Source: Glycera tridactyla (Eukaryota). Taken from it: 64,000 nt of DNA. The notes beneath the pieces were generated by a model. The model worked only from the letters and a program-made list of their open reading frames with translations, was not told the origin of the DNA and did no database searches. Made by a program: the position numbers and the translations under genes. Shown piece after piece: positions 988 through 42,900 of this stretch. Where the stretch lies: positions 55,924,001-55,988,000 of the forward strand of contig OZ286476.1 in assembly GCA_965644265.1 (NCBI GenBank), given 5' to 3'. Positions within the stretch are counted from its first letter, which is position 1; each line of letters starts with the position of its first letter.

Positions 988-3900
988 GTAACCATGACGA
1001 TATTTGTCATGCATGCAACCTGTAATCATCACTGTCTCACTTTCCTTTTACTAACCTTTTAACTCTTTGGACCTTTAGTACCATTTAATCATTCTTTTCC
1101 AGTCTACAGGTCTCTACATTTTCCAAATCATCCAGGAATATTTCTGGAATCATATTATATGCACGTTTGTCTGTCCATCCTTTGGTTACATCAAATGGTC
1201 TTTGTATATAGGTGGCCATTAAAAAGAGGTCATTCACTGTAGAAAAAACAATCATAGTCACAGCTCCTGATGGCTTTTGTCGATGTTGGGGGGTGGTCTT
1301 TGTATAGAGGTGGTCTATTGAGTACTTTCAACTAATTTTCAAATCTTTGGATGCAACTGGCTCTTGAATTCCATTTTCTGATAGCCTGGGAAGAAATTGG
1401 GGATCTCCTAGCTTCATACAGGTAGCAGTTCAGAGCTCTTACTTGCTTTACAACCAATGAGCACAGTTGGTTTACCTCCATTCATGACAATGTTCATACT
1501 CAGATATTGAATGGCCTGCAACAACGAAAATATCTCTGTGAGACACCAGTTTTGCAGCACATATAGGGCTCTACGTTGGCTAGGATTTCCTGTCAGTCAA
1601 ATCCCTTGAGCCAAATCTAAATTTGAGTAGCCAGTCAGTGGTGAATCAAATTGAGTGTTCAGGGGCCAGCTGGCTCCTAACTTTGAATTTTTAGTAGGTA
1701 TGGTTGAAATCGGTAGCATCTGGCTACCCAATGGTAGCAACTTGGAGCCCTAATACATACACCTTCAGGCTAGAACACCCTAAAAGAAAATCCTATCTTT
1801 TCAATGTTAAATTGGTCAAATTCCCTCCCCCATACCAGCACCCCAAAAGAAATTTGAGATGTCTCCATACTACCTTGCTATGGTACTATGTTTCCTCTAT
1901 TTCCACTCAAAAATTCAACATAGCATCACCTGCTCGTTTTTGAGATAACTGGATTTGAAGTTAGGGTGTTGGGGATTTCTCTCACCTACCCATGGAGGAT
2001 ACCCCTATGGGCCTGGTTACTCACAGGAGAGAACCTGCCCCATAGGCGCATGAATACATGTTCTCAATACAAGTTTCTACTCATTGTTGTAAACAAATAA
2101 ACATGTACTTCTATTTAAAATACAGAATGGGTTTCATTCCACATAGTCATTAGAGTCATAGAGCTCTAACTATGATTTCCCATTATAGTTCTTGGTCTAC
2201 CAAGCGCCTATTGGCCGACGACAGTGCTGCCGTGACCTCTTTTAGGGTCATCTAGCCTGAATAGAAACTGATATTTGGGATTTTCATTCCATAGCTCTCA
2301 GGAAATATTCTTTGGGTCATAGTCAATATACTTGGTAAATATAAGCTAAATGCATTGACTATTCACAACAATATGGGCAAAGCCGTTGAGGGTGTCATGT
2401 CCCGGAAATGGCTGATTTTCCCTCATGCATATACCATGGATATTCAGGCCGATTCCTAACTGTCCTTGTTGCCATGGCAACCATGATTGATGCATTTCAT
2501 TCAAAATTATCTATCACATACAATGTACAATCTCTGCAGCAAATATTCATGTGCTGCTCACTGGATTCACATGGCTATTAACTGCCCTGATGGCCGTTGA
2601 TAATCTCTCCACATGGTGTTGGGGAGGGGGGGGGGTGGCATATCGGCAGGTCAGGAAACAGCCCTGAAAAGGCATGAAATTCCAGATTTCACCCTCTCTC
2701 TGGAAAAACAGAAGTCCATGACATCATATTTTTTTTACTTGAATAAATCAGTATCAACTCCCCTTCAATTTGGTACCAGAAAATCCAAGATCCCTCTGAA
2801 AGTCTTCAGATGTCGGATCAATTCCCCATCAGACTACTGATACAGCTTCTTCCTGTGTGAATAGAAACTGATATTTGGGATTTTCATTCCATAACTCTCA
2901 GGAAATATTCTTTGGGTCATAGTCAATATACTTGGTAAATATAAGCCAAATGCATTGACTATTCACTACAATATGGGCAAAGCCGTTGAGGGTGTCATGT
3001 CCCGGAAATGGCTGATTTTCCCTCATGCATATACCATGGATATTCAGGCCGATTCCTAACTGTCCTTGTTGCCATGGCAACCATGATTGATGCATTTCAT
3101 TCAAAATTATCTATCACATACAATGTACAATCTCTGCAGCAAATATTCATGTGCTGCTCACTGGATTCACATGGCTATTAACTGCCCTGATGGCCGTTGA
3201 TAATCTCTCCACATGGTGTTGGGGAGGGGGGGGGGGGTGGCATATCGGCAGGTCAGGAAACAGCCCTGAAAAGGCATGAAATTCCAGATTTCACCCTCTC
3301 TCTGGAAAAACAGAAGTCCATGACATCATATTTTTTTTACTTGAATAAATCAGTATCAACTCCCCTTCAATTTGGTACCAGAAAATCCAAGATCCCTCTG
3401 AAAGTCTTCAGATGTCGGATCAATTCCCCATCAGACTACTGATACAGCTTCTTCCTGTGTTAAGGCTAGAACACCCTAAAAGAAAATCCTATCTTTTCAA
3501 TGTTAAATTGGTCAAATTCCCTCCCCCATACCAGCACCCCAAAAGAAATTTGAGATGTCTCCATACTACCTTGCTATGGTACTATGTTTCCTCTATTTCC
3601 ACTCAAAAATTCAACATAGCATCACCTGCTCGTTTTTGAGATAACTGGATTTGAAGTTAGGGTGTTGGGGATTTCTCTCACCTACCCATGGAGGATACCC
3701 CTATGGGCCTGGTTACTCACAGGAGAGAACCTGCCCCATAGGCGCATGAATACATGTTCTCAATACAAGTTTCTACTCATTGTTGTAAACAAATAAACAT
3801 GTACTTCTATTTAAAATACAGAATGGGTTTCATTCCACATAGTCATTAGAGTCATAGAGCTCTAACTATGATTTCCCATTATAGTTCTTGGTCTACCAAG

Positions 3901-6900
3901 CGCCTATTGGCCGACGACAGTGCTGCCGTGACCTCTTTTAGGGTCATCTAGCCTTCAGGTTGATACATGCCATTAAACCCAGACCGACCAATCAATCAAT
4001 TACCTTTTTGGAGGGACCATGAGGTCAAGATGCGGGTATGCTACTTTTTGAAGGGAGACCTGAGAGCCATTTCATGTAATGTTACTTCTTTTTTTTGATG
4101 AAGTTTGATACAGATACCACCCCATGGGATCTCAACTGCTTCTCCCACTGGTATTACTTGTGTGTTACTTACCCAGCTGGTGTTTACCCTCTCATGGAAT
4201 GATTCACTATCTATCTCATCAACTTCACTCATGAACATCACTGTTTGTTTTGTTTTTATCACACCTATATTGATATCACCATCCTCCTATGTTAACATTT
4301 CACAGTCTGATGACACCGGCATCGAGAATGAGTCGACATTCCTGTCATCTGCAAGTGAAAATGTGTCAAGTGTTGAACAGGAAATTAGTGAGAATGAGGA
4401 TGGCCGTTCATCAGTTAACACACATTTCACACAGTCCCGCTCCGAGATCAACACTCAGATGAGCCAAGTTGGGATTATCTTTTATTTCTGCATATTGTAT
4501 ATATGTTGTTTATTTTACATTGGCTAGCTAGATACAGTGGAACCTGCCACAAGAGACACCCCAATATTTCACTAAAATGCAGTCTCTCAAAAGAGGTGGT
4601 CTCTCATCAGAAGTAGATTTGACTACATCAAATACAAAAAAAGGCCCTGAAAAAGTGGTCTCCCATCAGAGATGGTCTTTCTCCAGGAGGTCTTTCGTCA
4701 CAGGTTTCACTGTATGCACCAGGTGCCAGCAACTGATGTTTTTTTTTGAAGATATATGAAAAGAGACTCACAATGCTAATAGTGATGCTAATTGATATCA
4801 CTATCAGTACCAAATAGATATTTGACATAAAATGTTGGGAGAGATGTGTCTGAACTGATAACTGCTTTGGTTTGCCATGGTGGTTAAAGATATGCTTGCC
4901 TGACTACTCAGACATACCAACAGGCTCCAATCAATCAATCAATCAATCAATCAATTACTCAATCAATCAATCAATGCAGTACTTGCAGAATCTATGGATG
5001 AGTAGTAGATCTCATGTGTTACGAAGATCGTTATATGATATGCTACATCCCTGGCACCTGGTATTTTCTACCATTGCAGCTGCTTCAATCATGAAATCTT
5101 TTTTCTCATCTGTCATTCAATATGCTTATAGATCAGACAGCACTGCTGCAGCATTTCATCTTGAAACCACATGCCGAGATCTAAACATGCACAGATATTT
5201 TATTTCTAGGATGACTACATGCAGAAGCTACGGTATATGTATTCACTTAATGCTTGTCAGTGGATACATACACACAAGTAACATGCACTCAAACTGGAAA
5301 TCATGGATCTTCTAAATTGCGCATGGTGGCCAGCTGCTTATGATGGTATTCTATGGCCGTCCGTCCACCCTGTCTGTAGTGCATTGCTTCATGATGAGCC
5401 TGATGATGAGGTAGTCATGGTTATATTAGCACCAATATCTCCTGTAGCAAATTTGGCTAAAGCACCCAAATCATTCATGCCTTAGCCTGGAACATTATGA
5501 GGTGACAAAACTTTGGCATTATTCATAATCTCAAACTAGCAAATCACACTCCACTTATGGGAAATCAATTTTCCAGCCTCCACATCATACGTAAAACACC
5601 AGTTTATCATGTCTACATGCACAGTATGAGATGTGTAATCACTGCCTTCATCTACTGAAAACCAACTTATTTTGGCCAGTTTCGCTAGTCTTGTAAATTT
5701 CTGTAGCCAGATGAGAAAAGTATCCTTTTCTGGAACCAATGTTTTGTGGCCATCGACTTGGGCCAGCACCCATCATCTGCATAGAATGCCTCATTGCTTT
5801 CTTAGTGAGGATCACAAAAATTTCATGGACTATCCATTCTAATTTTGAGGAATACTTGCCAAGCAAGAAACCTGTATTTTTTTTGGTGCTAGCTTCCTTG
5901 ATGTTCATGTCCATTATTTGCAGGAAGGTCATTGTTACACCACCTCATTTCAGTTTTAACTGAGAGTCTTATTGATATTGAAACGCCATATCAAATTTCC
6001 TGACTTGATTGTACCTGTCTTGATAATCAACAATCTGGCATGAGGTGGATCATATTCTTCCACTGATTGCATCTAGATTTCATCTGACTTCATTTCAGGG
6101 TCTTTTGATCACATCATCACACCAAGTTTTGATTCCAACTTAACCTCAGCTTCTGGCCACTGCAGTACATATGTTTGGATGCAATAGTTTCATTTTCATC
6201 CAGCAGATGACCATTATTGACTGAATCAGGCCTTGCAGAGATTCTGGACACAGATAGATGTCACTGTTGTTTGTCACAATCCCACTCTCAATACTCATCA
6301 GGGCTCTATGTTGGACAAAATATCCAGGTGCCGTCTGGCTCTTGAGTTGATATCTTTGGTAGCCAGTGTTAAATGTTGCTAGGCATTAGATACATTGTCA
6401 ATTACAACCTCTTAGAATTTTAGTGACGGCTGGCTCCTAACTCTCAAACTATGGTAGCCAGATGATAAATTTGGTAACCAGTAGCATTGTAATGCCGTGT
6501 TCTGGCTGTACTAAGGAGGAAGTATTGTGACTTCGGAATTCCTGAGTAAGAGGTACCTTATCAGATTGACTGATGACCTGTCCGACTCTGTCTCAGCTGT
6601 TCATGGTGTTGCTGTGTCAGTCATGAGTGGGATGTGTTGGCGAAATCATCTTAATTGATAATCGACCTTGGTCTTGACCATGGTTTCTCACTTAAGCAGT
6701 ATAGCGATTGTATTAATTCAGTCAAACCTATTCTAATCAGCCTTCCTTCAGGAAGGCATGAAAGCGGCCACTTAGGGCAGGTGAATCATTGTGAAAAAAC
6801 CTTTGGTGGGAAATTCAAAAGTGGCTGCTTGAAAGGCAGGTGGCCGCTTAGGACAGTTTGTTTGTTTGTCAAACTTTTACTTTGTTTAATCCACCCTGTC

Positions 6901-15900: not shown

Positions 15901-18900
15901 CCATCGTGTGTACAGACTGTAAATTCACCTCCTCTAACAACAAATCTGCCTGCCTGCTTGCTTCAGAAAAGTGTTCTCTCCAAACAAGTAGTCTCTTGTC
16001 AAGGGTCGAATAAGCAAGAAAATGAAGGCAATGCATCCAACAGAATGTCCCTTCCTTTTTTCATATTAAACTGCAATAACTCCAGAATCGATGGACAAAG
16101 TTTTGTAATTTGTCTTGATTTCAGGATGAGCCAGCAGCGCACCCATTACTACAGAAGATCGTGAAGGAACCATGGTTTCCACGCGGTAACTCGCCAACTC
16201 TTGCCTCCATTACAGCTGCATTCCTCGGCATTCTTGATCTGGTGCCAAGCAACGTCCACACCAGCATCTGTCAGCACATCGTCAAAATCAACAAGTGAGC
16301 TGTTACAGTCAAACCTGCCCACAGTCGCATTAGAAAAGTGGTCTATCTATCCAGACCGCCTTTTGTAGACACTAGCAGGTCGTTTACTGTAGAAAATATT
16401 GTCACAGTCATGGTCCAGGATGGCCTTTGTAGAGTTTGTTTACTCTGAAAAATATCTCCCCAGTCACGGACAAGGGTGGCCATTTTAGGCAGGTGGTCTC
16501 TAAAGCAGGCTTAACTACATATCTAATGATGATGATATTAATCAAAAAATCCTCAAAATCCTTTTGAAGAATAATTCTATAATATAGGGTTTACTATAGT
16601 CAACACCAGTCATGTGAAAGGCAGCTTTTGTTGGGGCAAGAATTCACTCTCTCATCATGCATTCCATCATATGCAGTGGGTTGATTGCATAGTACTAATA
16701 TGGGAATTCTCTTTTTTGCTCTGAGAATGTATACTTTTTACTCGTGTCAGAAATGGGTGGCTGTTTGGGGAATCAATCAACCGGGATCTATTGGGATTGG
16801 TAAACAATTTTGATCACTGTTTAATCAACATGTGAAGATAGATTTGTTGCATGGGGGATGGTTACCAACATGTATCAGACGTGGGAAGGTATGAGTACAT
16901 CTGTGAAAAGGAGTCACAAGATGCTGGAGAGTGGAAAATAGACAAATATATTTGATGAATAGGGTGTGTTTGCTCTAGAACAAATACATTTAGTTATGCA
17001 TTCTGTCATGATGAAAATGAAAGGCAAAGACATCAATCAGTAAAATCAAAACCCAACTCGATCAATTAGACCGATTTCTGAGCGAAACTTTTCAACACTA
17101 ATCATCACAACTATATTACAGAAGTATCTCTGCTGTATGTGGAATTGGGGTAAGGGTGGTCTCTGTACAGAGGTCTCCATGAATAGTGAGGTCTTTAGAG
17201 AGAGCATCTAATCAAACAATGGGTTTAGTTTTGCATCAAGTTGATGATTTCCGTCTCTTCAAGATGATGCCAGATAAGAAATCTGCTGACAACATTCATT
17301 GGTGAGTAATATTCAAAACTGAAGTAGGATGACCAATCTACATTGGAATAAAACTATTGAAATGTACAGATCACAATCTAGATTATAATTCTGTCTATTT
17401 GATTCGTCATAGTTACAGATGCTTCTGTATTTCAGTGATATTGGGTTCACTGGAGACCAACAAGACAAGATCGTCAACAAACTGCTCCCTCACCTGCAGG
17501 ACCAAGACTCTGTCAAGCGTGAGAATACGGTACGAACCCTCGGTGAGCTGGGCGTGAACAATGATACCGTCATCATGGGTGTCCTCCCAACACTCGTAGA
17601 TAAAGAGGTAAGTACGTCAGTAATACCCTCCAAGCTACCATCATAAATTTGATTGTTAAATTTGATCGAATCATCAATCAATTGACTTTCATTTCATTCC
17701 ATTTCAGCCCAGTGACAATTTCAAACCCCGGAGAACTCTGATCGTTCAGTGCTACTCCTGAAACTTTTTTTTCATGTGAGGAGCCTATTTGTGTTAGGAC
17801 TGTATGTTGTTTGTTTGTTTGATTGACGTTCAGTCAACACTTGAAGAATACCAATTTAGTGGATGGTGACGCTAGTGCCTTCAGAGATGGGGAGCATGAG
17901 TTCATCAAAAGTCACAAGTATTGAAGAGCAAAAGATAGCCAAATGTATTGAAGTATATGATGATAGGAATATGTTTGTTTGAGTCCAATTTTGATCAGTT
18001 TCATCAATTGCCAAGTCAATTTTCTCCTCACTAGTATGTGTATGTGTACAGGAGAATTTTACATGAGTTTAATATACAGTGTGATTATCTTGGAAGTCAT
18101 GCATGTGGGAAGTAATCAGAACCAGTTTAAAATTCAATTACTAAGCTAGCCCTAGTCATATACTAATGCTCTTGATATTGTTCCTTGTTTATTAGCCAAA
18201 TTGGCTAGAATGTAGGGGCATTCTTACTGCTCCCTTGTTAGATGGAGATATGTTATGGGAGCATGATAGATCTTCACAGCACAAAAAATCATACTTCAAG
18301 CACCAATCCAAAATGTCCAAAAACAAAGTTTGAAAATCTTCAGATAAATCAGTGAAAACAACTGGCAAGGGCCACCAGCCAAATGCTTGCAATTTTCCAG
18401 ACAGGCCATTGAATAGTGAAATCAGTTTTCCCACATTGCAGATTGAAATTCATCAGCTTTGCAGATATATAGTATTGGGCAAGTAGTTGTGGTACAGTGG
18501 ATTTTGATGTGGGCTGGTAGACACCACAAGTTACCAGCCATTATGGCCAGTGGTCTGCCACTATTATTCCAGAAGATTTTTAATCTGCTGGTGAAACTAG
18601 ATTAGAATTCTGTCTGATGGCTTTCACTCAATACAAAACCAAGTATTTTTTTTCTTTCGCAGCAGTACAGAATTTAGTTGAGTGCATTGCTGTTCTGTGA
18701 TGACATAAAAGATAAGATAAAACAAGGATAATGTCAGGGTGAGAGATTGCAGTCAGATATGATTGCCCTGGATTTGAAAAATGAAGCTTTGCAGGTAATT
18801 TGTCTTGTCTGTATGTTAAATTGATAATCGAGGAAATAAATTTGTGTGGGTTTGATGATCATGATAACTGACCAATTTAAAGGGCGATGGTGAGGCTGGA

Positions 18901-21900
18901 AGTGATGAAGAAGATGAGAAACCTGCAGAAGAGGATGCTAATAACAATGAGACAAAAGATGCTGAGAATGCGGAGGTACACGGAGGCATGAGAGCCAACG
19001 CTCACTTTCTGCCCATCACTCTCACTCATTTCTCAATCACTAACAATTAATTCTCACCTGATTAATATGCATGATTCCTGTATGAAATTAATGTTTTATA
19101 ATGTGGCTCACCTCAGGGTTTGATGGCGCAGTAGGCTGAGAGGAATGATTGATTGGTTAGAGTTTAACAACATGCGTCAAAGGATTATCTACGCTGCCAG
19201 GAGGAATCTCTACATTGTTATCACGTCATTGGACCAGATTGCTACCTTTGCCTACCCACCACATCACAAATCTGTCCATGCATGCTAACCAAATTATTAA
19301 TTTTGATGTTCATTCCTGAACTTTTGAAAGTTTCCCAGATCTACCAATACTGACTACCTCCCCTAGTCAATAATAGGTTCTTGAAATGATTTTCAAGAGT
19401 CAGTCTTGATCTTGGATGTTTTGTGTGAGCAGCCTCCGAATCAATCCACTGAATTCTGTTTAATTCATCAGATAAAATATCAGAATTTGCACAAACTATG
19501 GTTTGAAATGACTGGATGACTTCCACAATGTCAGGAGTTTGCATCAAATCGAATAACTTTATCTGTTGGATCAGACTTAAGCCTGACTTTCCATTGTAAC
19601 AGGAGTGCTTGTTTCTTCACAAGGTTACATTTTTTCACCAAGAAAAGTGTAACCATAACATTCACCAGTAATATATTTTTTCAAAGTCGAAATACTGTCT
19701 AGACAATCAACCTACTCTTTCAGTCTGATGTAATCACTCAATCAATTAACTGCAAGTCATCAGTTTCTGGTATGAGTAAGGCCAGATGAATGAGAATCAA
19801 ACAGAATAGTAAATGCCGATCCTGGAATAACCTGCTGCACCATCAACATTGTCAGATCAGACCTAATAAAGCAGAATGATTAGAATGTTGCACAGTTGGC
19901 TTGATTCTGACCTCTTGAACCTGATGTTGGCTCCTTCAAATATTGGCCTCCTATGTGTATGGCCTGAGAATCCTCTAGGTGCTCATGCTTGTGAAGGACC
20001 ACCTTCTCATCCAGTAATTGAAGAGGAAGTTCCCTGACAATGGTGGCCCTTCTTTATCTTGCTTTCTAACAATGCGTTTTGAACACTCAGTCAAAAATAC
20101 TTCAAATGAGAGACCACCTCTTGAGAGACTGCTTTTTCATGACATTTAGGGGTGGTCTCTCATCACAGGTTTCACTGTACTGGTTTTCAGGTATGGTGAG
20201 CACAATTCCAAATAGCAAAACTCCAGCTGCGGTGTTCCAGGAGAATTGGGTCAAATGTTCACTCACTGTCACTAATTCCTCAACTAACATTCATTTACTT
20301 TCAGCTCTGGTTGATAGGAATGTGCTTCCTCACCTCTAGTTGCTTTTGATCTTATCTCACATCCTCCTGAACTAACACTTTGAGTGTCTGTAATTTTCAT
20401 ATAATCTCACCTTCTTTCGGCACACAGGAATCTTGAATGATCGCATCCATGCCAATGACCAACAATTTCATGAACTCATTATTTCATAGACTGTTTACAA
20501 TAATTTTCTCTAGTGTCCAATTCACATACAATATCAATATTTCTTTGTTCCTGTGGTTTTGAAATATTGCTCACCCCGATCATTGAATCGAATCTTCATC
20601 GAACTATAGATATGATATTTTTCAGCCATTTCTGTGATGATCATGATCAGGTATCCTCTCCATACTACATGTGTGAGGGAGATACAAGAGACTGTCTTGT
20701 AGAAAATAATACCTGTCACTAGAATTAGCCTCAAGTGTATGCATATCTCAATTTTAGGCAGCTTTATCATTTATTTCTAGTGTGATGGATGTTTCTTGGC
20801 ATTCTTTTTTTTTTTTTTTTTAGATGATTGACCATCATGTTGTTTCATGTACTTTTTTCCGATATCATTCCCTTAGAAAAATAGGTATTCCACTGAGCAA
20901 GATGTAACACTTTCGTAATCCACTCAGAGGTTGATCAGTGGTTGCAGATTGGTCCATATACTCAACTTGCGTGTTTGATGGTTATTCCATGGAATGTACA
21001 TTATCTGTCATGAACATTATAAAATCACCCACCTGATATCAGTATGTGAAGCCATGGCATCCAGATCGCCAGATCCTGAATAAAATGATGGAAATATTGA
21101 GAATGGTGCCCCAACATGCATGTTTCAGTCAACCTAGAACTTCAAATATTGTGAGATTTCACCTTATAGATCATTCATGGACAGCGAGCTGTCAGCAATA
21201 TGCAGGGTGAGGTGTGACTTGACTTCTTGTGACAACTGCAAACATGTAGAGGTTGTAATACACCTGATTTCAACTAAATCACTACTTCTCAAGGCAAATA
21301 TGAGATAACTTGAAATGAGTGCTGTAATTAAACAAAGTTTAATGTCAAAAATGTGGTATTTTATTGAGTGAGCTGTTGTATAACTTATGTTTGATATTAA
21401 TGAGGAGGTGGTTTATTTGATAGGGTGGTATCAAGTTGGAGGCAGCAAAAGCCCTGCGGAAGTTGGCGGGTGTATATGACAAGACCCAACTACTTTCATT
21501 GATGGAGCAAATGGGGACGTTTACTCGATATGACAGCCGAACAGATGAGGTGAGTGGGAAAATTTCTGTCACATCCCGATTCGAGAATAACTTGTAAATA
21601 GGGTGGGGCAATGCACATAATAATTGATGATAGGTCTATCACTTCAAATATCCTATCTTTCCTACCTTGAATACCATGAATTTGTACTGTTTGAGGAATC
21701 AATTTTCTAGTATGAAAGCTTCAAAATCCAACGACAATCACTGATTTCAAATGTTCAAAATATTAAGGTACATGCCTAAAGCTGTTGTGAAAATGGAGCA
21801 TATTTGTAAGATTCACTTGTGAAAATTGAGGATGTTTGTAAGATTCAGATTGAAGTTTCAAGCTTGTGCTCAAAATAGCTGTAGTTTACGAGCTGTTTTG

Positions 21901-24900: not shown

Positions 24901-27900
24901 GAATGAAGCAGAATGGTCTGTAATGACAGGTTCTACTGTAATGGCAAGACCAGACTGTGTTTGTCTGTGTTATACATAAAGAAGGCTGGGAAATGTAAGC
25001 AGAAATTCATCGGATGTTATCACATAGCTCTGGTACTCTCTGTAATTCCAACTGAAATTGATTGCGATACATTTTGTCATGGATTGTATTGAATGATGCA
25101 GTTGTCTGATAAGTGAAATTCACTGAAACTCAGTGAGGTATTACCTCAAGATGTGACTGGACATGGTGATGGAATATCTCAGTCAATGAGCCATATGAGA
25201 CACTTCAAATGTATCACATAGTGGTTTCAGCATAAACGTTCTATTAGATGGAACTTCGGAAGTTGATAAATTATCTGCTCTTTTCTGTTCTTACAGGATG
25301 ACGTGTTACGGCATCTAGAAGAAAACTTGCTTCCGGATGCCGTACCAGAAGAAGTGGAACAGCGAATAGCAGATTGGATGGAGCAGACTCCACCAGAAGG
25401 AGGAATTGTACCAGAGGTCTTTATTCATTTCCTATTTGAACCATCTCTTCACTTTCCTAATTGTACAGAAGAATCAAACCTTCAAGACAAGGGTTGTCGG
25501 ATTTCCAGCAACACCATGATGAGTTGGCATCGATCAACGTTAATGCATTGCGATCAATTAGAGAGCAGTTCCAGTAAATCTGTCATATTTATTTCAATCT
25601 GTAACTCAGTCCAAGTGAAGTCTCAATTCCTTTTAATTTCATCCAATACCTAACTGTGGTAAGAAATTTTAAGTATGAAAAACCTACAAGCTATGGTCAT
25701 ATGTAATTTCTGAAGTTGTCACTTCAGTTGCATATCTTTCTTTCTTATACCTTTCTTCCTTCTGTATCACCAATCCTGCTTGAGAGACCACTTCTACCAA
25801 GCCCTCCTGCTGAGACCAGGCTGAGTGGTGACCACGATAGTATTCTGTACAGTAAATGACCTCTCTATACAACCTGCCCATCTACTAAGATCACTTTTTG
25901 GTGCAACCAGAAGTGGGCAGGTCTGACTGTATTATGCCACAGATTGAAAGACTGCATATTAAGTTGAGGCAGATGACAGTAATAGAGGGAAATAGACTGA
26001 CACAAGTCAACCAGCCAAAGTCAAGCATTGTCTCAGGAGGGTTAGGGAATCGCAAGTTTTATCAGCCCACATAAAAGGTAGAATTTTCCAGGAATGTAGA
26101 TATCGTGTACATGTATTGGGTCAATATCTCTGGTACAGGGGATTTTGATATGGGCTGCTACATTTCAAAAGTTACCTATCCGCATTGGTCAGTGCAAGGT
26201 CAATGTTATCAATGATTTTGAAGAGGATATTCAATAATTCTGGGATAAGGTTGTCAAAATTCCGATCTTAATTCTGATAGTTATCAGAATCCTAATGAAA
26301 GTGAATGCACCTCATTAGTTTCTTAATCAGTTTTTCCCAGCCTGAACCTGCATCTGTCACCTTCATCTGAATCACTGATGTCCGTTTTTCAGCATCTGAC
26401 TCTGTCAAAATTGCTCGCAGTTTTAATGATTTGGGTATAGCTTTGAATATGGACAAGTGTGTTCGGCTTTGGTTCAAACATACTTGTGTGATTCTTTCTG
26501 ATGGCAATCAAAATTCAGACAAGAAGTGACAGTTGTGATTGTTGATTAATGGGCTATATTCTTTTTCACACAGGAAGATAAGATTCTTGCTGTTTCCCGC
26601 CGTAGCTCAATGGCGAGTCATGCATCGCTGGCACTAGAGGTCGCTGCGTCACTGTCGCGGGCGGCATCAGCTGCTGCTGCTCAGCGTACAGCATCACAGC
26701 AATCAGGCATTCAGGATGATGTGGTGACAGCTGGATCACGTGAGTAACTCTTTAATGATATATTTATATGAGAAAGAGGGAGTATAACATCAGTGACTTG
26801 CTGAGTGTAAAAGAAAGAACATGGGCAGTTAAGGATATGGATCCGAATTGATGCAAGGGGCTCCATTGAATATGTGAAAAGATCAATGAAGAAAAATGTT
26901 GCCAACACATCCCACTCACGACTGACTCAGCAATGCCAGGAACAGCGGAGGCAGAATTGGACAGCCTGGTATTTCACTGACCTGTCCTACTCTGCCTCAG
27001 CTGTTCCTGGTGCCACTGAGTCAGTCATGAGTGGGGTGTTTTGGCAACATTTTTCTTTTTAATCTTAAAATATATTTTCATGCTTTCTGGTGCTCTGCCT
27101 TCCCGGGATCTGCAGTGAATACAGCTGTCTTGTGATTGTATCCATACAATGCACAGTTTATGTAGACTGCAAAGACGGTTCTTGGTCACATGAGAAAAGG
27201 CCTTTATAGACAGGTGGTTTTTGTAAAGAGCTTGTATACTCATGAAGTAGTACTACTGAGGTAACCACCTCAGTGGTCTTTACAGGCAGGCTTTGATGGC
27301 TTTCCTGCGAGAGGTGTGTGATAGCACTTGCCAGTATTACATCACCAGTATGATAATTCATGTGATTTAACCTTAATGTATGCACTGCAATTTCAAATAC
27401 AATTATGAGCAGGAGTCAGACTCAAGCAGGTTGAACTATAATCTGACAGGTAGTATGGACTCCGTGAAACGAGCACTGATGGTTTATTGAAGCAAGAACC
27501 CATAACTATAGGATAAACTTCTCATGAGGTGGGATTGCATGGGCTTAAAGGCCACAATGATCCCCATGGCAGTTCCTTTCGGTTGAGTGCCAGCTTCTGG
27601 TAAGTTTCATACATATATTGCTGCAGATGGATTTATCTGGTCTTCCATATTTTGGACAGTGGTAATTCAACAGGGTCTGCATCCAGAGGTGGCCTATAGG
27701 GCATTTCATACATATTGTTGAGTGGTTGCCCTTTTCAGTTTACACGTATTAAGGGGCCACAATGTCTCCTGTATCAGCAGAAGGATTGCACCTAATCCAT
27801 GTTGAGTGAACTCATTTTTCTCTGGATAGAACCCTGATGTAAGGAGAGCATAGATCCACCCCCTATCCCCTTGACAGTGGTGTGTAGAGAGTAAACATTT

Positions 27901-30900
27901 TGACTGCTGTTTTTATTGGCAGCTGAGGCAGCTGAAGGCCAGGATGAGGAGGATAAAACAGGCAAGCAGATTCACTCTCACATATGATGTGACTCATCCC
28001 TCATTTGGTTCTGACCATTCCACCAATGGTGACTCACTTTTATGTTGTGCATGTGTGGAAAGAACATTCTTCCTGCTCCGTTCTTCAGAACCTTCTATCA
28101 GTTGCCTCGTAGGTCTCCAAGTCAATTCCACGTGACCCCTAATTTCATCTGAAAACTTCATTTTATAAATGATGCAAACATTTGACAAGGAATGTAAACA
28201 TCACTGCATATTTTATGATTCGGAAGGATAATTTATTCAAAATGAAATGGAAATTCCAATATGATAGTCCCATTCTTACTTCTCAACCTGCAACTGTTGG
28301 TCTTAAACATAATGCCAAATTCATGCATGAATAGCTTCCAAGTTTCTGCATGAACAGTGCCCTAAATACCCAGTCTTAAGTTTGCCTGACTGCATCTTGG
28401 TGATCTGTTGCTTATTGCATTTGAGCTGAAATCTCTTCATGAATTTTACATTCAGTTTTCTTGATTTGCATGAAATGTGAAGCGTGAGCAGTTGGCTCCC
28501 AATCATCCAGTTACCCCGTCTGGTCAGCCTGACAGTCAGTCAGTCAGTCAGTCAGTCAGTCAGTCAGTCAGTCAGTCAGTCTTCATGCACTATCATTCAC
28601 AATCAGTGGTGTTGATTGTGAAAGGCTAAAAACTTAAGTGATCAAATATGCATCTGATATGATGATAACAGTGATGATTATCAAGACTTCTTCATCCATG
28701 TATCACAGAGTTTGTTCAACCCTTTCAAACCTCAGCTGCAGCGTAGCCACTGTGACAAGACACCAGCTTCGTTTTCAGATGAGAATGAACCACAAAAACA
28801 TACATCTGAATACACCAAGGCTTGCTGGCTGCCACAAATCCATTTTGCTACTATGCTTCAGGAAACATGAAATGATTCTAACTATATCAAGATTCATGTT
28901 GATGAATATAACAGTTCTAATTATGTAATGATTTATGTTCGAATATTTATAGATAGCTTACCATTCAAATGAATAACAAACTTCATATAATATGTTTTCC
29001 TGCCATACAATTCGACAGCCCTCTGAAAAAGTGCCTGTATTAGGTTTGTGGTCTTGAGTTGATTTAACTGCCTATCAACTTAATATTGATTAATGAGATT
29101 ACTTGTTACATAAATTAAGCCAAAAAGATATTTACTCATATATTAGTCCCCTTCAGTTTGCTTGTATTTCTGTTGCAATGCATGTAATTATTTTGATGGG
29201 AAAATATGTTTTATTGTGGATATCTACCAGAAGATAACAAGGATGACGCAGACACAGGATTGAAGGAGAAAGTGGTGAAAAATCCACCACCAGCGCCGCC
29301 ACAGAAGTTGCTACGACACCCAACTATCATCCTAGCAGTGGAACTAGCAAGCGATATAGAGGATGAGGGATCACAACTTGATGGTGGGAAGACTAACAAG
29401 GATGAGAGTGAAGTGGGTGTTACTAATGACAATGACACTGGGAATTCCCATGATCAGAATGAGGCTGGGGCTTCTCTGGATCAAATGGAGACAGAGGAAG
29501 CCCCCGAGCAGGAAGCTGAGGCATCCTCCACACAGAATGATGCAGCTGACATTGAAGAAAAACCTGACCTTGATGACAAGGCTGACCTTGAAGAGAAGCC
29601 TGACATTGATGACAAGGCAGATGATGAGGATATAGACCAGATGGAAACTAGTGGTGCTGTGAATGTGGACAGTGATGCAAATGAGGAGGTGGAGGAGGTT
29701 GCTATTGAAAAGAATGCAGCCAGTGATGGAGATGCAGAGTGTGGTGACTAACTTACTAACCTTTTTCTGTTGACACCAGTCACCATCATCCTTCTCTGTA
29801 CAGAATCCCAGCTACCTAATTGTTTACCATTAGAAGTGGGAAAATGATTGTGAACATCATAGCCGGTGATGAATAATCCTGTGACGCATTATTCCAGGAT
29901 ATTTTCCATCATTTCTTTTGCAAAAATACTCCCAACCAACAAGGTCATGAGAAACTAGATTTCAGTAACATGAGTTGCTCATATAATTTCCTTCTTGGTG
30001 TTAGACTTTGCCGTTCAGGAATAATTTTATAATCCACCCAAAGTTAATACATGTAGATCAGAAAATGAAGTACAGCAAAGTTTGCTCTTGTCTCACAGCC
30101 AGGGAATGTTTCTTTCCTGTTCCCTCTCAGCAATCAAAGGTGCTGTGATGAGGACTGGCTGACATTGGTAGCTCAAACATTAGTAAGAACATTTACCCAG
30201 GTTGAAAAACATAGTGAATTTCAATGTATGAAAGAAACTAATGAGCTTTCTTCACATTAAGTTGAAATATGAGTAACACCATGCAGAAGCTCAGTTCTCC
30301 AATCAAATGTTGTTTTGTAGATCTACCGTAATTGTTGATGGATAAAATTGGTAGCTACATGCAGTAAGGTGTGATGTATAGTTACAGAGGAGGATGAATC
30401 ATGTACTGTAGAGTGAAGTACTCACAATATCACATTGTGTTTGAATTTGTGATGCATAACTAACAGAACACATTATTGTGAAGTAGTTTTGTCACGGGAG
30501 AAGGATGGAGCTTGGGCTGGTACAACCAGATAACTTCAGATGGTTATTTGGATCGTGCATACCGAAACAGCACATGTGGATTTCGGTAATGCAACACAGT
30601 ATGTGATGTCGAGAAACTGCACAACTTCATGGCATTTGTGTAGTACGCCCACGTGACGTAGCACCCCGCTGCTTCTCAGAGAGCCTGGAACACATCATAT
30701 AGCTGAGTAGGATCACAGTCAAGCTTGCTTGCAGATGTTGATTGCAACTTGAGGCAGCATTTAGCTGTAAACATGTGTGCGTGGATATTAGAAACATGAT
30801 TCACATCTCCTTCAACTGCTCCCACATCCTGTCTCACTTCTCTTGTTTCTCTTCTACTCTCTGTACCCTGTTGATATTTGCCATCTTGCAGCAGATTGTT

Positions 30901-33900: not shown

Positions 33901-36900
33901 CCCTATACTCGCAGTACGATGCCATCACACATCCTAGTAACCTAGTCATCAGCCCTAGTAACCCAGAACTGGTGTGCTTGGTACCCGCTTTTTGCATAGT
34001 GACAATATCTGCAACAGGCAAACCGTCAGCTCCCCAATTCTGGAAATCAAGATCACATCAATCAAAGTCCTTACAAAGATTGGCCATGAGTTAATTGAGT
34101 TACATCTCAGACGTTTAATTCTTTCTGAGCTTGTAGTATAAATTAATTTTTGGAATTGTGGACAGCTGGATGATGAGNNNNNNNNNNNNNNNNNNNNNNN
34201 NNNNNNNNNNNNNNNNNNNNNNNNNNNNNNNNNNNNNNNNNNNNNNNNNNNNNNNNNNNNNNNNNNNNNNNNNNNNNNNNNNNNNNNNNNNNNNNNNNNN
34301 NNNNNNNNNNNNNNNNNNNNNNNNNNNNNNNNNNNNNNNNNNNNNNNNNNNNNNNNNNNNNNNNNNNGTCTGTCTATCTTCATGTCTGTCTTTCTCCACC
34401 GACCAGCATCATTCATGTGTGCGTGCGTGCATGCATGTTGGGGATAGAAGGTCATGTTATGAATTTTTGCCACTGACTTTCACAATCCTAATTCCTCTTC
34501 CAGATCTCCTGATGTCACAGAAGTGGTTAAAGCACCATCGTAAGTAAACCTTTCAGTAGACAGAGCAGTACATTTATTTGCCATGAGATTGCCTTTATGA
34601 TGTATTCTACATATTTTGATAATACATGTATACGAAACCTGTTTCATGGTATAAATGAGGAATTGGGTTCTTGGAGGTTTTTTTCATGTACAGTCAAACT
34701 TGTCCTAAGCATGAAGCCAAGAGATGTGATAGAACTGTGAGCTTAGAGCAAGTTCATGCTTAGTACTGGTCAATTATATTGAAAAATACTCTGGTGGGAT
34801 GAACAGAACATGTTGCTTGGGGCAAGTTCTTGCTTAGGCAAGTCTTGCTTAGGAGGAGTTTGACTGTATTTGAAAACCTTTTCTCCAATATGATTTAAGT
34901 AATAGTACTAAAGCAATTACGTGGTAATGTACATTGAAACCTGTGATGAGGAACCACCCAGAATGTCACTGAAAATTGTTTCAAAAGAGGTATTCTCTAT
35001 ATCTGGCTTTAGTTTGGGGTGGCCTAATTGGTGGCTCTCATGTAACAGGTTTCACTTTCATCATGCATATTTCTTTTTTTCCCCTCTGAATGATGTCAAG
35101 TGGATATATGATGGTGCTAATTAGATATTTTTCTTATCTCGATCATGCAATAGGCATATTTCAATTAGAAACTCACCATAATCCCCAAGAAAGATGAAGA
35201 TATCCTCAGTGGCTGAGAACCTGCTTAATATTTCACACTTGTCCAGCGTCTTGCGGTGGCCACATGTTCAAAAGCCCTTGTTATATTGTTTGATAAGGTG
35301 ATGATCAACATCCTACAGAAAATATCCACAGAACTCAATTCCCATCCCCTCAAAGAAAGTTTCATAGCATCTTGCAAGTACAATTTGGTCCACTTTTGCC
35401 AGTAGCAGGGGCACAGGAACTTTTTTCATACTCTGCCATTTTGATTTTCCGTGTTGTGTGACATCGGAGTGGCATTATGTTTTCGAATCGACTCTGGTGT
35501 AGGTGGGTAGGTGGGTGAATGATGAGTTCTGAAAGATATCTCAAAAACGCTCAAGGCTAGCCCTCTCAAACTTGATCTATGAACTCTCCTACTCTATGGC
35601 AAGACACCTATTGATTTTGGCGTGGCCATCTTGAATTTCAAGGTCACTGAGTGCAAATAGGTCAAAACGCTTAACAGACAATAACTTCAGCAGTTTCAAG
35701 GGTAGCCCTCTCAAGCTTGGTGTACAGAGGCATCTAAAGATTTTGGGGTGGCCATATTGACTTCCAAGGTGTGAACATGTATTAGTTTTGTTCATATATT
35801 TCACTTCTCTTATTTGCGCTTCCTGTGACAAGCATGCACTCAGCATGGCATTTGCACTCACTGAGTGCATCCAGTTTATGTCAGGTCAGCCCTTACTTTC
35901 CCAGCAGTCAGACCAAGTTGGCCCCTCATCTTGAGAGGCTGGATGCAGCTCTGTAGGCTCACCCAATTCCTCTTATGTCAGATGTCTTTATTTGATTTTG
36001 AGATTGCTGAAGAGGTACATTCTGTTTGCAAAGTATGTAGCCCACCCAATATTTCAATGTTAGTTCGATTTGCTCACAGGTTCATTGAAGTTGCATTAAA
36101 TTTGACTGAATAACAACAAACTTGAACTGACATAGCCAGGAAAGTCAAGTGACACACATATTGCAAAATAGATAATACTCTGCCAACAAAATGAATGTTA
36201 ATGTCATGGTTGTGAAAGACAGGTTAATATACTGACCAGGGATCACAACCCATTACCCATTACTTATCAGTCTTTTCATTGATTGTGATATTCAGCACTT
36301 ATATTGCGTGAATGAAGTGATGGTCCTTATTTTGGAGTGATTGTTTTGAGGGAGTTAGTCACAACTTTCCATTGAATATACGACACAAAATTCAGTGGGT
36401 GATATCTCACTGAAATTGATGCATTTGAGGTATGCTTTCAATACCTGGATAGCTGAGGTCAATGATGATTCACTATGTATTGTGATACAGGAGACGGATG
36501 ATGGCAGTAAGTCTGGGGTCATTCAGACCAGAATCAAGGTCGGCAAGGTCAGACTGGTCAGATAGGTCAAACATCACTCTTCCTATGACCCTAGATACCA
36601 TGAGTCTCTCCCGACAGTCATCAAGGGCGTTCTCCATGCGCTCGATTGCTTCCTACTCACCGAGGTCGTTCACGGCTACAACAATCGATACACCAAGGTC
36701 ACTGCGTTCTTGGCGCACTGAGTCAATAACCTCTGCAATTTCTCGAGCTCGTGCACCAAGAATCCTCAAAGCTCTTGGTCCTCATTTAAGTTCAGCTTCC
36801 CGGCCTCGATTTGTCATTTCATCACCCAAATCAAGTGCAGGCTCGTCACGAAGAACCTTGTCTCCATTCAAAGTTCCTCGCATTCTGGTGGAGGAGTAAG

Positions 36901-39900: not shown

Positions 39901-42900
39901 TTAGATCAATTCAATCGACTTATCATCTCATTTTGGTTGCTGATTACCCAACAATGCAGCTTTTTCAAACCGTTTCATGGCTCATATGAAATAGTCCCCT
40001 CATGTTTTAAGGATTAGGATCTTGTGAAATCACATGACAGGATCATCAAGTGGAACATGGTTCATTTTATTCAATCCCCATGTGTTTTTGCTGAGTGAAA
40101 ATAATGCCCTCAGTGGGTGTATGAATACAAAAACTACTAATGTTATGCTCCTCCTCCAAGTAAACTGACACAACCCAGTAAATCTAGATGTGGAGTTATC
40201 CAATGAGAGAGAGACAGAGCAGTTTGATTGTGAACATCAAATGTAGTATGCTGGGTGCAAATGCAAGCGTCAATTCTCCAACATGTGTCTTGGCGCTCTT
40301 TCATCACAGGTTTTACTGTACAAACCTGCTTACTTGATTGTGATGTTCTGCGGCCACAGTTGTTACATTTGCATACCTGTGTACATGGAAGACATTCATG
40401 GTTCTTCATATACATGTATCACAGGAAGAAAACTGAGTACAGGTAAATCATTCATAGATTAACTCTACCAAGTGGTTTCTTGAGACAGGTGGTTGCTAAA
40501 CACAGTGGTTGTTTGATACAGGTAATATATACCACGAATAGCGCTAGCTACGGTTGAATATAAGGGTGTTGAATATAACTCGTCAGGACCACTGGTGCAC
40601 GCACCTACGTCACTGCATAGTCACGTGACTCGCTATTGTCTTCTCTACCATGGACACATTCCATGCAGCGCGATACGCAGGCGGCTAAACTGTCTGTAAA
40701 ATGATTCATAGTTCACTCATTTTTTCATTGCATGTCACGAATCTGAGTCCAACAAACACACAAAATATATTGTTTGATTCCGCATGATCTGCCCTGTTCA
40801 ACAAGACAACTTTCAGATCCCTAGCTCATTTGGAGTGAAATTCTACCTATAGTGTATTCAGGATGAGTTGGCAGCTGGCAGGAGGGGCTCCATATGTACG
40901 AATGAGCTGCCAACTCATCCTGAATACACAGTATTTGTTCATGTTTTTTATTCATTGTAACTTCCGTATGGTTCATACAAGGGGTTCTTGATTGGATAAA
41001 TGGAATCAACAAATAGACTGAATTCCATTCAGATGAACTTACAGCCATCAATTACCATGATGAATCGGAGTATATTGTCAGTATAATCCACTCGGCCTTC
41101 GGCCTCGTGAATTATACTGACAATACACACCTCGTGGTGTATAACTTGTCAGGACAACACCCCATGATTTCTTGCTATAGAAGCAGACAGTGTAGATTAT
41201 TTTAATTTCTGTGATTAGCAGATGAAAAATCAGAGGAGGAGACAAAGAGTATGGCTGGCGTGGCGAGTGTGCCAGATACAGGCATGGGTACGGACATCGA
41301 GTCGGAGGCTTCACGTACTGGCTCCATACAGGTAAGACATATACAGGGAAACCTGCCACCAGAGACCACCCTGAATGTCACCAACAAATGGTGTCTCATC
41401 AGTGGTATATATGACTATGTCAAATAGAAAAGCTGCCTTAAAAAAAGTGGTCTCCCTTCAGAGGTGGTCTCTGGTCGGGGGTCTGATGTTGCAGGTTTCA
41501 CTGAATTCACCATTCACTAGACCTTTTCAAATCTATCTCATTACAATTTCAGCCCCTTCCACATCTGCATTCAGTTTTCTTTTATCTTGGAGGACATAGA
41601 TGATGAGCAGAATATATCCAGAGTTGGTGATTGTTTCACTATCCCCTGCTGCCCATGGAGTGATATAGCAAGAAGTACCAGCCGCAGGCCAAGAGACTGC
41701 CAACGGCCGGAGTCGCACCAAGTGGGGAAAAACAAGCCAATCATGCCCAGCTGGTGCTTCTTGCTTTTCTCTCACGACTATATTGACATAAAACATTATA
41801 AGGAAATGGAAAGCAAATACTTTCCTGTTTACCAGCATTCAACCAGTGTTGAGTGCTGAATTTGCTGGTTATGTAGGGTAACTTCACCATAGCAATGATT
41901 GTTTCAGTGACGTCACAATGCACGGAACACAGCAGGGAATGATCGCTGCGATCACACACTCCCCGATCATTCCCTGCAAATGGCACTGAGAGAAAGCCTT
42001 TTCTCGTCTGTCGGGAATTTTCCATTCTGATAGAACTTCCGGGAGTATCTCCTGAGTAGTTCATGTTTCAAGTGTATAGACTTGCCTGTCTGAAAAATTC
42101 TTCTGCATCCAAGAATTTGATTAGGTTATCCCAAAGCATGGATGTGACAAGTCAGCGAGTTATGATTCTGGTCTGAGTATAGCGACATTTCAAATATTTC
42201 AAGTACCGAGCCGTCACAGTTTTGTTGCAAAGGTTTTCTTGGTCATCACAGGAGAATCCCATAGTGAAATATGATACAGGAAGATGAAGCCAGATGTTAA
42301 ATGTGAAATGGTACGTCGATTACAATGGTGTTGATTGAAAGATATAGTTTAAAGAGGGAAATAGAGAAAATTCTTCCTGAAAATGGCCAGCTTCTTTGCA
42401 GATGATTACTCTTCACATGTTTCAATGTATCAGTATCAATACTACTAGAAGTGTATTGATATTTCTTTGATCGACACACAAGTCATCAGATATTGTTTTA
42501 CATTTATCTCACAAGGAAATAATGGTGGATAAACATAAAAACACTGTCTGGAATGGAGGGGGTTGGTAGCTTTGTATTTGTCAATGCTCTGATGTATTTG
42601 ACAGAAACTCTACTGTCTTTTTCTCTGGGGTTTTTTTCAATACAGGGCTGTACTTCTCCAATAAGGCCTCATCCACCCATGTACAGGAGATATGTATGTT
42701 TTGAACTGTCGAAGATTATGTTACTAACAGTTTTGGCTGGGAGGTTTTAGCTATCTAGCTGTTGGGAATTACGTCATCTGTGATATCTTTGTTGTTATCT
42801 GTTAAGCGGAAAAAGACAGTAGTTATAAAGGAGGAAGCGGAGGAGATGATCATTGAAGAGATGTATGGAGATGAGGAGCAAGGAGATAATGTAAGGTGGC

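What the first reader, a model, noticed from the sequence alone, without database searches (positions are those of the whole stretch)
1764..3957. Composite DNA transposon with long terminal direct repeats (KolobokP-like), non-autonomous
Seen: two apparently identical 490-bp direct repeats, each with its own 20-bp TIR (GGCTAGAACACCCTAAAAGA / TCTTTTAGGGTCATCTAGCC). The whole unit is flanked by a TTCA duplication and the inner repeat ends abut TGAA and TTAA, so all four ends sit on TTAA-like tetramers. Known: GG termini with TTAA targets mark the Kolobok superfamily, and its KolobokP lineage has LTDR-INT-LTDR architecture with LTDRs of roughly 450 or 660 bp. Inference: this is a young non-autonomous member that moved as one composite, since only the outermost tetramers match. 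Its internal region shows no transposase or His-Me nuclease ORF.
Basis: partly seen in the sequence, partly recalled or inferred. Interest (0 to 1): 0.8.

Follow-up and report, generated by a model that had tools for sequence, protein, structure and literature searches.

The report
Non-autonomous KolobokP-type composite DNA transposon
A 2.2-kb piece of mobile DNA, built from two identical 490-bp end repeats around a doubled 600-bp non-coding core, matches in every testable detail a known but unusual animal transposon lineage (KolobokP), so it is a fresh example of a described kind, not a new kind.

Summary
Window 1768-2257 and 3464-3953 are 490-bp direct repeats, 100% identical. Each has its own 20-nt terminal inverted repeat (18/20 complementary), starts with GG and ends with CC. 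TTCA flanks the whole unit on both sides.

The interior is not one internal region. It is two tandem copies of a ~600-bp non-coding unit (2258-2857 and 2858-3459, differing by 3 substitutions and a 2-bp G-run indel), followed by TTAA.

This layout, LTDR-(INT)2-LTDR with a single tetramer at the INT-INT joint, is a class already described for KolobokP by Kojima & Bao 2022. They explain it by excision of the middle repeat from a dimer. The repeat length, GG..CC ends, 4-bp duplication and TIR length all fit or nearly fit that lineage.

No ORF in the element has a Pfam domain, so it is non-autonomous. Probes from this element are absent from the published consensus set, so it looks like an undescribed family.

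I could not reach other genomic copies, the autonomous partner or the host species. Superfamily membership therefore rests on architecture alone. An 8-bp duplication (CCTTCAGG) cannot be formally excluded.

The parts
1764..1767 (.). Left target-site duplication TTCA
   Evidence: Matches 3954-3957. With the neighbouring CC and GG the direct repeat reaches 8 bp (CCTTCAGG).
1768..2257 (+). Left long terminal direct repeat (LTDR-1, 'A1'), 490 bp, GG...CC
   Evidence: 100% identical to 3464-3953. No Pfam domain in its ORFs.
1768..1787 (+). 5' TIR of LTDR-1 (GGCTAGAACACCCTAAAAGA)
   Evidence: Pairs at 18/20 positions with 2238-2257. The pattern occurs only 4 times in the window, 0.06 expected.
2238..2257 (-). 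3' TIR of LTDR-1
2258..2857 (+). Internal region copy 1 (INT-1, 'B1'), 600 bp, begins with the tetramer TGAA, non-coding
   Evidence: Tandem with 2858-3459. ORFs are at most 78 aa and have no Pfam hit.
2858..3463 (+). Internal region copy 2 (INT-2, 'B2'), 602 bp plus the terminal tetramer TTAA (3460-3463)
   Evidence: Differs from B1 by 3 substitutions and a 2-bp G-run indel. The INT-INT joint ...CCTGTG|TGAATAG carries a single tetramer.
3464..3953 (+). Right long terminal direct repeat (LTDR-2, 'A2'), 490 bp
   Evidence: Identical to A1.
3464..3483 (+). 5' TIR of LTDR-2
3934..3953 (-). 3' TIR of LTDR-2
3954..3957 (.). Right target-site duplication TTCA

Best explanation
This is a young, non-autonomous composite DNA transposon of the KolobokP type, in the form LTDR-(INT)2-LTDR. 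Each 490-bp LTDR is a miniature transposon with its own TIRs. A transposase supplied in trans by an autonomous relative (not seen here) can pair the outermost TIRs and move the whole unit, or pair the two TIRs of one LTDR and move or excise that LTDR alone. Shown by the sequence: one integration event, marked by matching TTCA on the two outer sides only; identical LTDRs; a doubled INT whose unit boundaries coincide with the LTDR edges; and no coding capacity. Inferred: a monomer (LTDR-TGAA..TTAA-LTDR, about 1.59 kb) inserted at TTCA. It became a dimer (LTDR-INT-LTDR-INT-LTDR) by unequal crossover between LTDRs, or by integration of an LTDR-INT circle. The middle LTDR was then cut out together with one adjacent tetramer (494 bp in all), leaving INT-INT with the single tetramer TGAA. 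Alternatively the (INT)2 form already existed in the donor and moved as such.
For: Anatomy: 490-bp direct repeats at 100% identity, 18/20 TIRs at all four ends, and matching outer TTCA. The inner tetramers do not pair up as duplications of single LTDRs (TTCA/TGAA around A1, TTAA/TTCA around A2). Two independent insertions are therefore unlikely, and one composite insertion is favoured. The tandem unit starts at the first base after A1 and ends 4 bp before A2. A random tandem duplication would not hit both LTDR edges. Kojima & Bao 2022 (PMC9587614) describe LTDR-INT-LTDR elements with 11-18-bp (in Table S1 up to 25-bp) TIRs and 5'-RR..YY-3' ends. The ~450-bp LTDR class in their data has 4-bp duplications. 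[quoted passage not shown] Published LTDR ends seen in their supplements nearly all start GG and end CC. Several start GGCCAGA or GGCTATAGA, close to GGCTAGA here. TTCA appears as a duplication in KolobokP-5_GiAe. All three independent tetramers lie within one mismatch of TTAA, the canonical Kolobok target (p about 1.3e-4 by chance). No Pfam domain was found in any ORF of the element.
Against: No transposase, His-Me nuclease, second copy or solo LTDR could be examined, so the link to the Kolobok superfamily is architectural only. At 490 bp the LTDR is slightly above the published ~450 class, whose listed maximum is 483 apart from one 515. Eleven k-mer probes from the LTDR and INT are absent from the 228 published consensus sequences, so there is no sequence homology beyond a short TIR motif. 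The INT end tetramers differ (TGAA vs TTAA), whereas in the published examples seen they are identical. The outer flanks share 8 bp, so an 8-bp duplication with CTAG..CTAG termini is formally possible.
Confidence: 0.75

Rival explanations
1. The element is a composite ('macrotransposon') built from a 490-bp MITE of another superfamily, for example one making 8-bp duplications such as hAT. It would then be unrelated to Kolobok, with CTAG..CTAG termini and the duplication CCTTCAGG.
For: The outer flanks share 8 bp, not just 4. No transposase is available to fix the superfamily. There is no sequence homology to published KolobokP consensus sequences.
Against: GG and CC adjoin CTAG at all four LTDR ends, including the two inner ones that do not touch the target site, so GG..CC belongs to the repeat. 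CCTTCAGG does not fit the hAT target consensus nTnnnnAn, and CTAGA does not fit the usual hAT end YARNG (own knowledge). Long direct terminal repeats with their own TIRs, and INT-INT joints with one tetramer, have so far been described only for KolobokP.
Confidence: 0.1
2. Two independent insertions of a 490-bp MITE happen to bracket a host tandem duplication. Nothing moved as a composite.
For: Each A is a complete MITE-like unit with both TIRs.
Against: Neither A has matching tetramers on its own two sides, although both copies are 100% identical and so very recent. Only the outermost pair matches. The B array fills the space between the two A copies exactly, to within 0 and 4 bp. The sequence outside the A copies is unrelated to B.
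Confidence: 0.05
3. It is a non-autonomous LTR retrotransposon (TRIM-like) with 490-bp LTRs and a duplicated internal region.
For: It has direct terminal repeats that are identical, as expected right after reverse transcription, and a short flanking duplication. Tandem TRIM arrays are known.
Against: The repeats do not start TG or end CA. They carry an 18/20 TIR of 20 nt, far longer than LTR termini. There is no TGG-type primer-binding site next to either repeat in either orientation, and no purine tract upstream of the 3' repeat (direct reading). A precise loss of one repeat plus one tetramer is a transposase-type footprint.
Confidence: 0.03
4. The A-B-B-A order, or the second B copy, is an assembly artefact, for example two alleles of one INT laid in tandem.
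For: B1 and B2 differ only by 3 SNP-like changes and a homopolymer length. No reads are available.
Against: The joint between the B copies sits exactly at the INT boundary with a single tetramer, which is the biologically documented pattern and not what a mis-join would produce. No N run lies near the element.
Confidence: 0.04

Closest known systems
KolobokP, LTDR-(INT)n-LTDR insertions of non-autonomous families (Kojima & Bao 2022, Mob DNA 13:24; e.g. KolobokP-1_MeMe, KolobokP-7_MeMe, and small N families such as KolobokP-N1_CorFlu 1463 bp and KolobokP-N6_BF 1461 bp)
   Same: Direct terminal repeats with their own TIRs, GG..CC ends, a 4-bp duplication, a short non-coding INT, and abutted INT copies sharing one tetramer. 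The TIR start GGCTAGA resembles GGCCAGA and GGCTATAGA of published LTDRs.
   Different: The LTDR is 490 bp, against 415-483 in the ~450 class. The INT end tetramers differ by one base (TGAA/TTAA). There is no k-mer match to any of the 228 published consensus sequences. The host is unknown and no autonomous partner was seen.
Bacterial composite transposons (two IS copies bracketing a cargo)
   Same: Two complete mobile units in direct orientation bracket a passenger segment. Either the outer ends or the ends of a single unit can be used.
   Different: Here the end units encode nothing, and the transposase of the lineage sits in the INT of autonomous relatives. This element is eukaryotic, and the end-unit length appears constrained.
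TRIM / LTR retrotransposons
   Same: An LTR-like layout, solo repeats and tandem arrays by unequal crossover.
   Different: No TG..CA ends, no primer-binding site, no polypurine tract, and a long TIR within each repeat.
Canonical Kolobok elements (Kapitonov & Jurka)
   Same: 5'-RR..YY-3' termini and a 4-bp duplication at a TTAA-like site.
   Different: Canonical Kolobok elements have simple TIRs and strict TTAA. Here there are long direct repeats and TTCA.

Membership tests
KolobokP | Long terminal direct repeats at both ends of the element | tested here: met
   490-bp repeats at 1768-2257 and 3464-3953, in the same orientation and 100% identical.
KolobokP | Each LTDR carries its own short TIR (published range about 11-25 bp) | tested here: met
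   A 20-nt TIR, 18/20 complementary, at both ends of both repeats (range).
KolobokP | Termini 5'-RR ... YY-3' | tested here: met
   GG...CC at all four LTDR ends (rule).
KolobokP | LTDR length about 450 bp or about 660 bp | tested here: inconclusive
   490 bp. The published ~450 class spans 415-483 with one 515. This is close to but just outside the usual range.
KolobokP | Flanking duplication of 3-5 bp (4 bp for the ~450 class) | tested here: met
   TTCA on both outer sides. Caveat: the shared string extends to 8 bp because the flanks happen to read CC and GG.
KolobokP | Abutted INT copies share a single 3-4-bp tip (footprint of LTDR excision) | tested here: met
   The joint ...CCTGTG|TGAA|TAG has one tetramer where TTAA+TGAA would be expected. 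The pattern is described and visible.
KolobokP | Autonomous relatives encode a Kolobok DDD/E transposase and an I-PpoI-like His-Me nuclease in the INT | not testable with these tools
   This copy has no ORF with a Pfam domain. No other copy could be reached in the window, metagenome, genome or viral collections, and the ORF word search found nothing.
KolobokP | Solo LTDRs, monomers and multimers co-exist in the genome | not testable with these tools
   The host genome is not available, and the window contains only this locus.
KolobokP | Sequence similarity to a described KolobokP family | tested here: not met
   Eleven 12-14-mers from the LTDR and INT are absent from Data S1. Only a short TIR motif (GGCYAGA..C.CTA) is shared. 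This is not a defining feature of the lineage, whose families differ widely, but it means the family is not one of those published.
LTR retrotransposon / TRIM | TG..CA repeat ends, a primer-binding site after the 5' repeat, and a purine tract before the 3' repeat | tested here: not met
   The ends are GG..CC. The sequences next to the repeats are TGAATAGAAACTG and CTTCTTCCTGTGTTAA, with no TGG start or purine run in either orientation.
hAT-type element | 8-bp duplication fitting nTnnnnAn, and ends of the YARNG type | tested here: not met
   An 8-bp repeat exists (CCTTCAGG) but does not fit the target consensus, and the ends would read CTAGA. The consensus rules are from my own knowledge.

The most novel reading that the evidence does not exclude
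The element may not be a Kolobok at all. It could be the first sign of a second DNA-transposon superfamily that has independently adopted the LTDR (paired mini-transposon) architecture, with CTAG..CTAG ends and an 8-bp duplication. A milder version: it is a KolobokP family in a host group outside the seven phyla reported. In that case its identical LTDRs next to a patchily diverged INT pair would reflect ongoing nuclease-driven homogenisation of the repeats.
Probability: 0.1. Interest if true: 0.6.

Novelty: new member of a known kind. Interest (0 to 1): 0.3.

Why it matters
KolobokP is the only eukaryotic DNA-transposon lineage known to be built like a bacterial composite transposon. Its proposed life cycle (transposition, solo-LTDR excision, nuclease-induced unequal crossover) still awaits experimental test. 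A copy with perfectly identical LTDRs and an intact excision footprint suggests a family that was active very recently in its host. Such a host could be a useful place to look for a live autonomous partner and for polymorphic insertions. Beyond that, the locus adds an example and no new principle.

Tried and rejected
I tried several routes to other copies and to the host identity.

- **Blastn of A and B against the window** found only the locus itself.
- **Metagenome scan with the degenerate TIR** gave four loci. They share only the 20-mer, have no partner TIR about 490 bp away and no other similarity. Four hits is at chance level for 18 fixed bases, so I rejected them.
- **Two scans of bacterial/archaeal genomes and one of viral contigs** gave nothing.
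- **Protein word searches** all found nothing. The queries were an ORF spanning the INT-LTDR joint, a retrotransposon-like ORF and a dispersed-repeat ORF. The host genome seems not to be represented, and the host stays unidentified.
- **Pfam on 26 ORFs** gave only a weak HEAT-repeat hit in a probable host exon.
- **Rfam and tRNA scans** gave nothing, in the window or in the element.
- **K-mer probes against the published KolobokP consensus file** found no family match.

I did not use the large representative protein search. The only open proteins are ORFs of at most 83 aa in a non-coding repeat, and the claim does not rest on them. I considered and rejected the LTR/TRIM, hAT, independent-insertion and assembly-artefact readings (see rivals).
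Full report
**What is there.** Reading 1500-4300 and the repeat search show a four-part layout, A-B-B-A.
- A1 (1768-2257) and A2 (3464-3953) are 490 bp each and identical at every base.
- Each A begins GGCTAGAACACCCTAAAAGA and ends TCTTTTAGGGTCATCTAGCC. These two ends pair at 18 of 20 positions; only positions 8-9 differ.
- With those two positions left free, the pattern occurs four times in the 64-kb window, exactly at the four A ends, against 0.06 expected from shuffles.
- Between the A copies lie two tandem copies of a ~600-bp unit: B1 2258-2857 (600 bp) and B2 2858-3459 (602 bp). They differ by three substitutions and a 2-bp difference in a G run. TTAA follows at 3460-3463.
- The tetramers next to the four A ends are TTCA|A1|TGAA and TTAA|A2|TTCA.
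- The outer flanks share at most 8 bp (CCTTCAGG), because the host bases next to TTCA are CC on the left and GG on the right, the same as the element's own end dinucleotides.

The one addition is that the interior is doubled.

**Coding capacity.** The longest ORFs in the element are 75-96 codons, and none has a Pfam match even at E = 1. Rfam finds nothing in the element at E = 1. The element is non-coding, so if it is mobile it is non-autonomous.

**One insertion or two?** A1 and A2 are identical and hence recent. Yet neither has the same tetramer on both of its own sides; only the outermost pair matches. The B array also fills the gap between the A copies exactly: it starts at the first base after A1 and stops 4 bp before A2. 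The DNA outside the A copies is unrelated to B. Two independent MITE insertions around a host duplication would not give this pattern. One integration of a composite unit does.

**The doubled interior.** If one INT is TGAA + core + TTAA, two INTs separated by an LTDR would read ...TTAA-LTDR-TGAA.... The observed joint is ...CCTGTG|TGAA|TAG..., so exactly 494 bp are missing: the LTDR plus one tetramer.

Kojima & Bao (Mob DNA 2022, PMC9587614) describe just this. They list insertions of the form LTDR-(INT)n-LTDR and note that 3-4 bp are almost always missing at the joint of two abutted INTs. Their example is a single TATA where two would be expected. They attribute it to excision of a solo LTDR from a multimer, which removes 1-5 flanking bases on one side. 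Their supplementary figures show such joints for KolobokP-1_MeMe and KolobokP-7_MeMe.

A random tandem duplication inside a ~1.6-kb element would not land on both LTDR edges. I therefore take the joint as a footprint of LTDR excision. This step is inferred, not shown.

**Comparison with the family definition.** KolobokP elements have long terminal direct repeats with their own TIRs and 5'-RR..YY-3' ends.
- In Table S1 the ~450-bp LTDR class (415-483 bp, with one 515) goes with 4-bp duplications, and the ~660-bp class mostly with 3-bp duplications.
- TIRs run up to 25 bp.
- Non-autonomous families are as short as 1421-1479 bp.
- Here the LTDR is 490 bp, the TIR is 20 nt, the ends are GG..CC, the duplication is TTCA, and the inferred monomer is about 1.59 kb.
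- Of the 12 published LTDR starts that I saw, 11 begin GG. Several begin GGCCAGA, GGCTATAGA or GGCTCTCAGAACAC, close to GGCTAGAACAC here, and the visible 3' ends finish in CC.
- TTCA occurs as a duplication in KolobokP-5_GiAe.
Even so, the three independent tetramers are each within one mismatch of TTAA (chance about 1.3e-4), which fits a Kolobok-type preference.

**What does not fit, or could not be tested.**
- Eleven 12-14-mers taken from both TIRs, the LTDR body and the INT are absent from the 228 published consensus sequences. The family is not one of those described. Apart from the short TIR motif, there is no sequence homology to lean on.
- The LTDR is 7 bp longer than the longest regular member of the ~450 class.
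- The INT tips differ by one base (TGAA/TTAA), whereas in the examples I saw they are identical.
- I could not reach any other copy, a solo LTDR or an autonomous partner. The window has none.
- The metagenome scan returned four loci that share only the 20-mer and lack a partner TIR. That is chance level for 18 fixed bases.
- The genome and viral scans were empty, and the three protein word searches found nothing.
- The host species remains unknown. The window looks eukaryotic, with a probable HEAT-repeat gene, no tRNA or Rfam hits, and about 40% G+C.

**Rivals.**
- *An 8-bp duplication with CTAG..CTAG ends (hAT-like or other).* This is formally allowed by the outer flanks. It does not explain why GG and CC also adjoin CTAG at the two inner ends, which never touched the target. 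The string also does not fit hAT target or end consensus (own knowledge).
- *A TRIM-like LTR element.* This fails on TG..CA ends, primer-binding site and purine tract in both orientations, and it has an untypically long TIR.
- *An assembly artefact.* This cannot be excluded without reads, but it would not be expected to produce the documented one-tetramer joint.

A literature search for long terminal direct repeats in transposons returned no DNA-transposon lineage other than KolobokP. A 2026 review still treats the proposed KolobokP mechanism as unconfirmed.

**Age and history.** There are zero differences in 490 bp of LTDR against three in 600 bp of INT. This is not a significant contrast (P about 0.09). 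All three INT differences fall in the first 110 bp (P about 0.006 if substitutions were spread evenly). That could be chance, or a conversion tract, or two INTs of different origin. I leave it unexplained.

**Verdict.** The best reading (confidence 0.75) is a recently active, non-autonomous KolobokP-type element in the known LTDR-(INT)2-LTDR form, belonging to a family not among those published. It is a new member of a known kind, and interest is modest (0.3). No contig was taken for human, and the N runs were left untouched.

Noticed in passing
window 2468-2481 and 3068-3081: Each INT copy holds a perfect 14-bp palindrome, GTTGCCATGGCAAC. The window has about five other independent 14-bp palindromes in 64 kb, so the chance of one in 600 bp is about 0.05. 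It could be a protein-binding site; KolobokP nucleases are thought to bind semi-palindromes. It could also be chance.
   Followed up: partly
window 2258-2367 versus 2858-2967: All three substitutions between the two INT copies lie in the first 110 of 600 bp. The probability is about 0.006 if they were spread evenly. This may be a conversion tract or a mixed origin of the two INTs.
   Followed up: partly
window 40514-41179 and 44024-44662: Inverted repeat arms of about 650 bp (76-98% complementary in blocks) enclose about 2.85 kb. This could be a long-TIR or foldback-type element, or two inverted copies of a repeat.
   Followed up: no
window 55339-55604, 56762-57218: A 266-bp segment is repeated at 98% identity 1.5 kb apart. 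The second copy sits inside a ~360-bp unit repeated about 1.3 times, with a C-run. Its nature is unknown.
   Followed up: no
window 34178-34367, 48680-48870, 51369-51560, 52158-52353, 59438-59573: There are five N runs of 136-196 bp. Some neighbouring sequence is repeated between these places, for example 34671-34837 and 59073-59238. The runs were left as they are.
   Followed up: no
window 61946-62479 (+): A 178-codon open frame looks by eye like the C-terminal tail of a non-LTR retrotransposon ORF2. It has no significant Pfam match and no word-search hit.
   Followed up: partly
window 17413-17643, 25270-25650, 29197-29748, 36486-36896, 49355-50347 (+): These are probable exons of a host gene on the + strand. 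One has a weak HEAT-repeat match (E 6e-4, below Pfam's cut-off). Another is a 330-codon lysine- and glutamate-rich frame. The gene was not identified.
   Followed up: partly
window 4532-4721, 41341-41512, 20089-20179; also 1196-1316, 48280-48328: A short dispersed repeat (69-81% identity) contains a GGTGGTCTTTRTAKAGAGGTGG-like motif, which also forms a 17-bp tandem array at 48280-48328. It is probably a SINE- or MITE-like family of the host.
   Followed up: no
L001 and L003 (metagenome Ga0081606): Two of the four chance-level TIR matches come from the same metagenome, on contigs of 37-40% G+C that look eukaryotic. Neither has a partner TIR or any further similarity to the element.
   Followed up: yes
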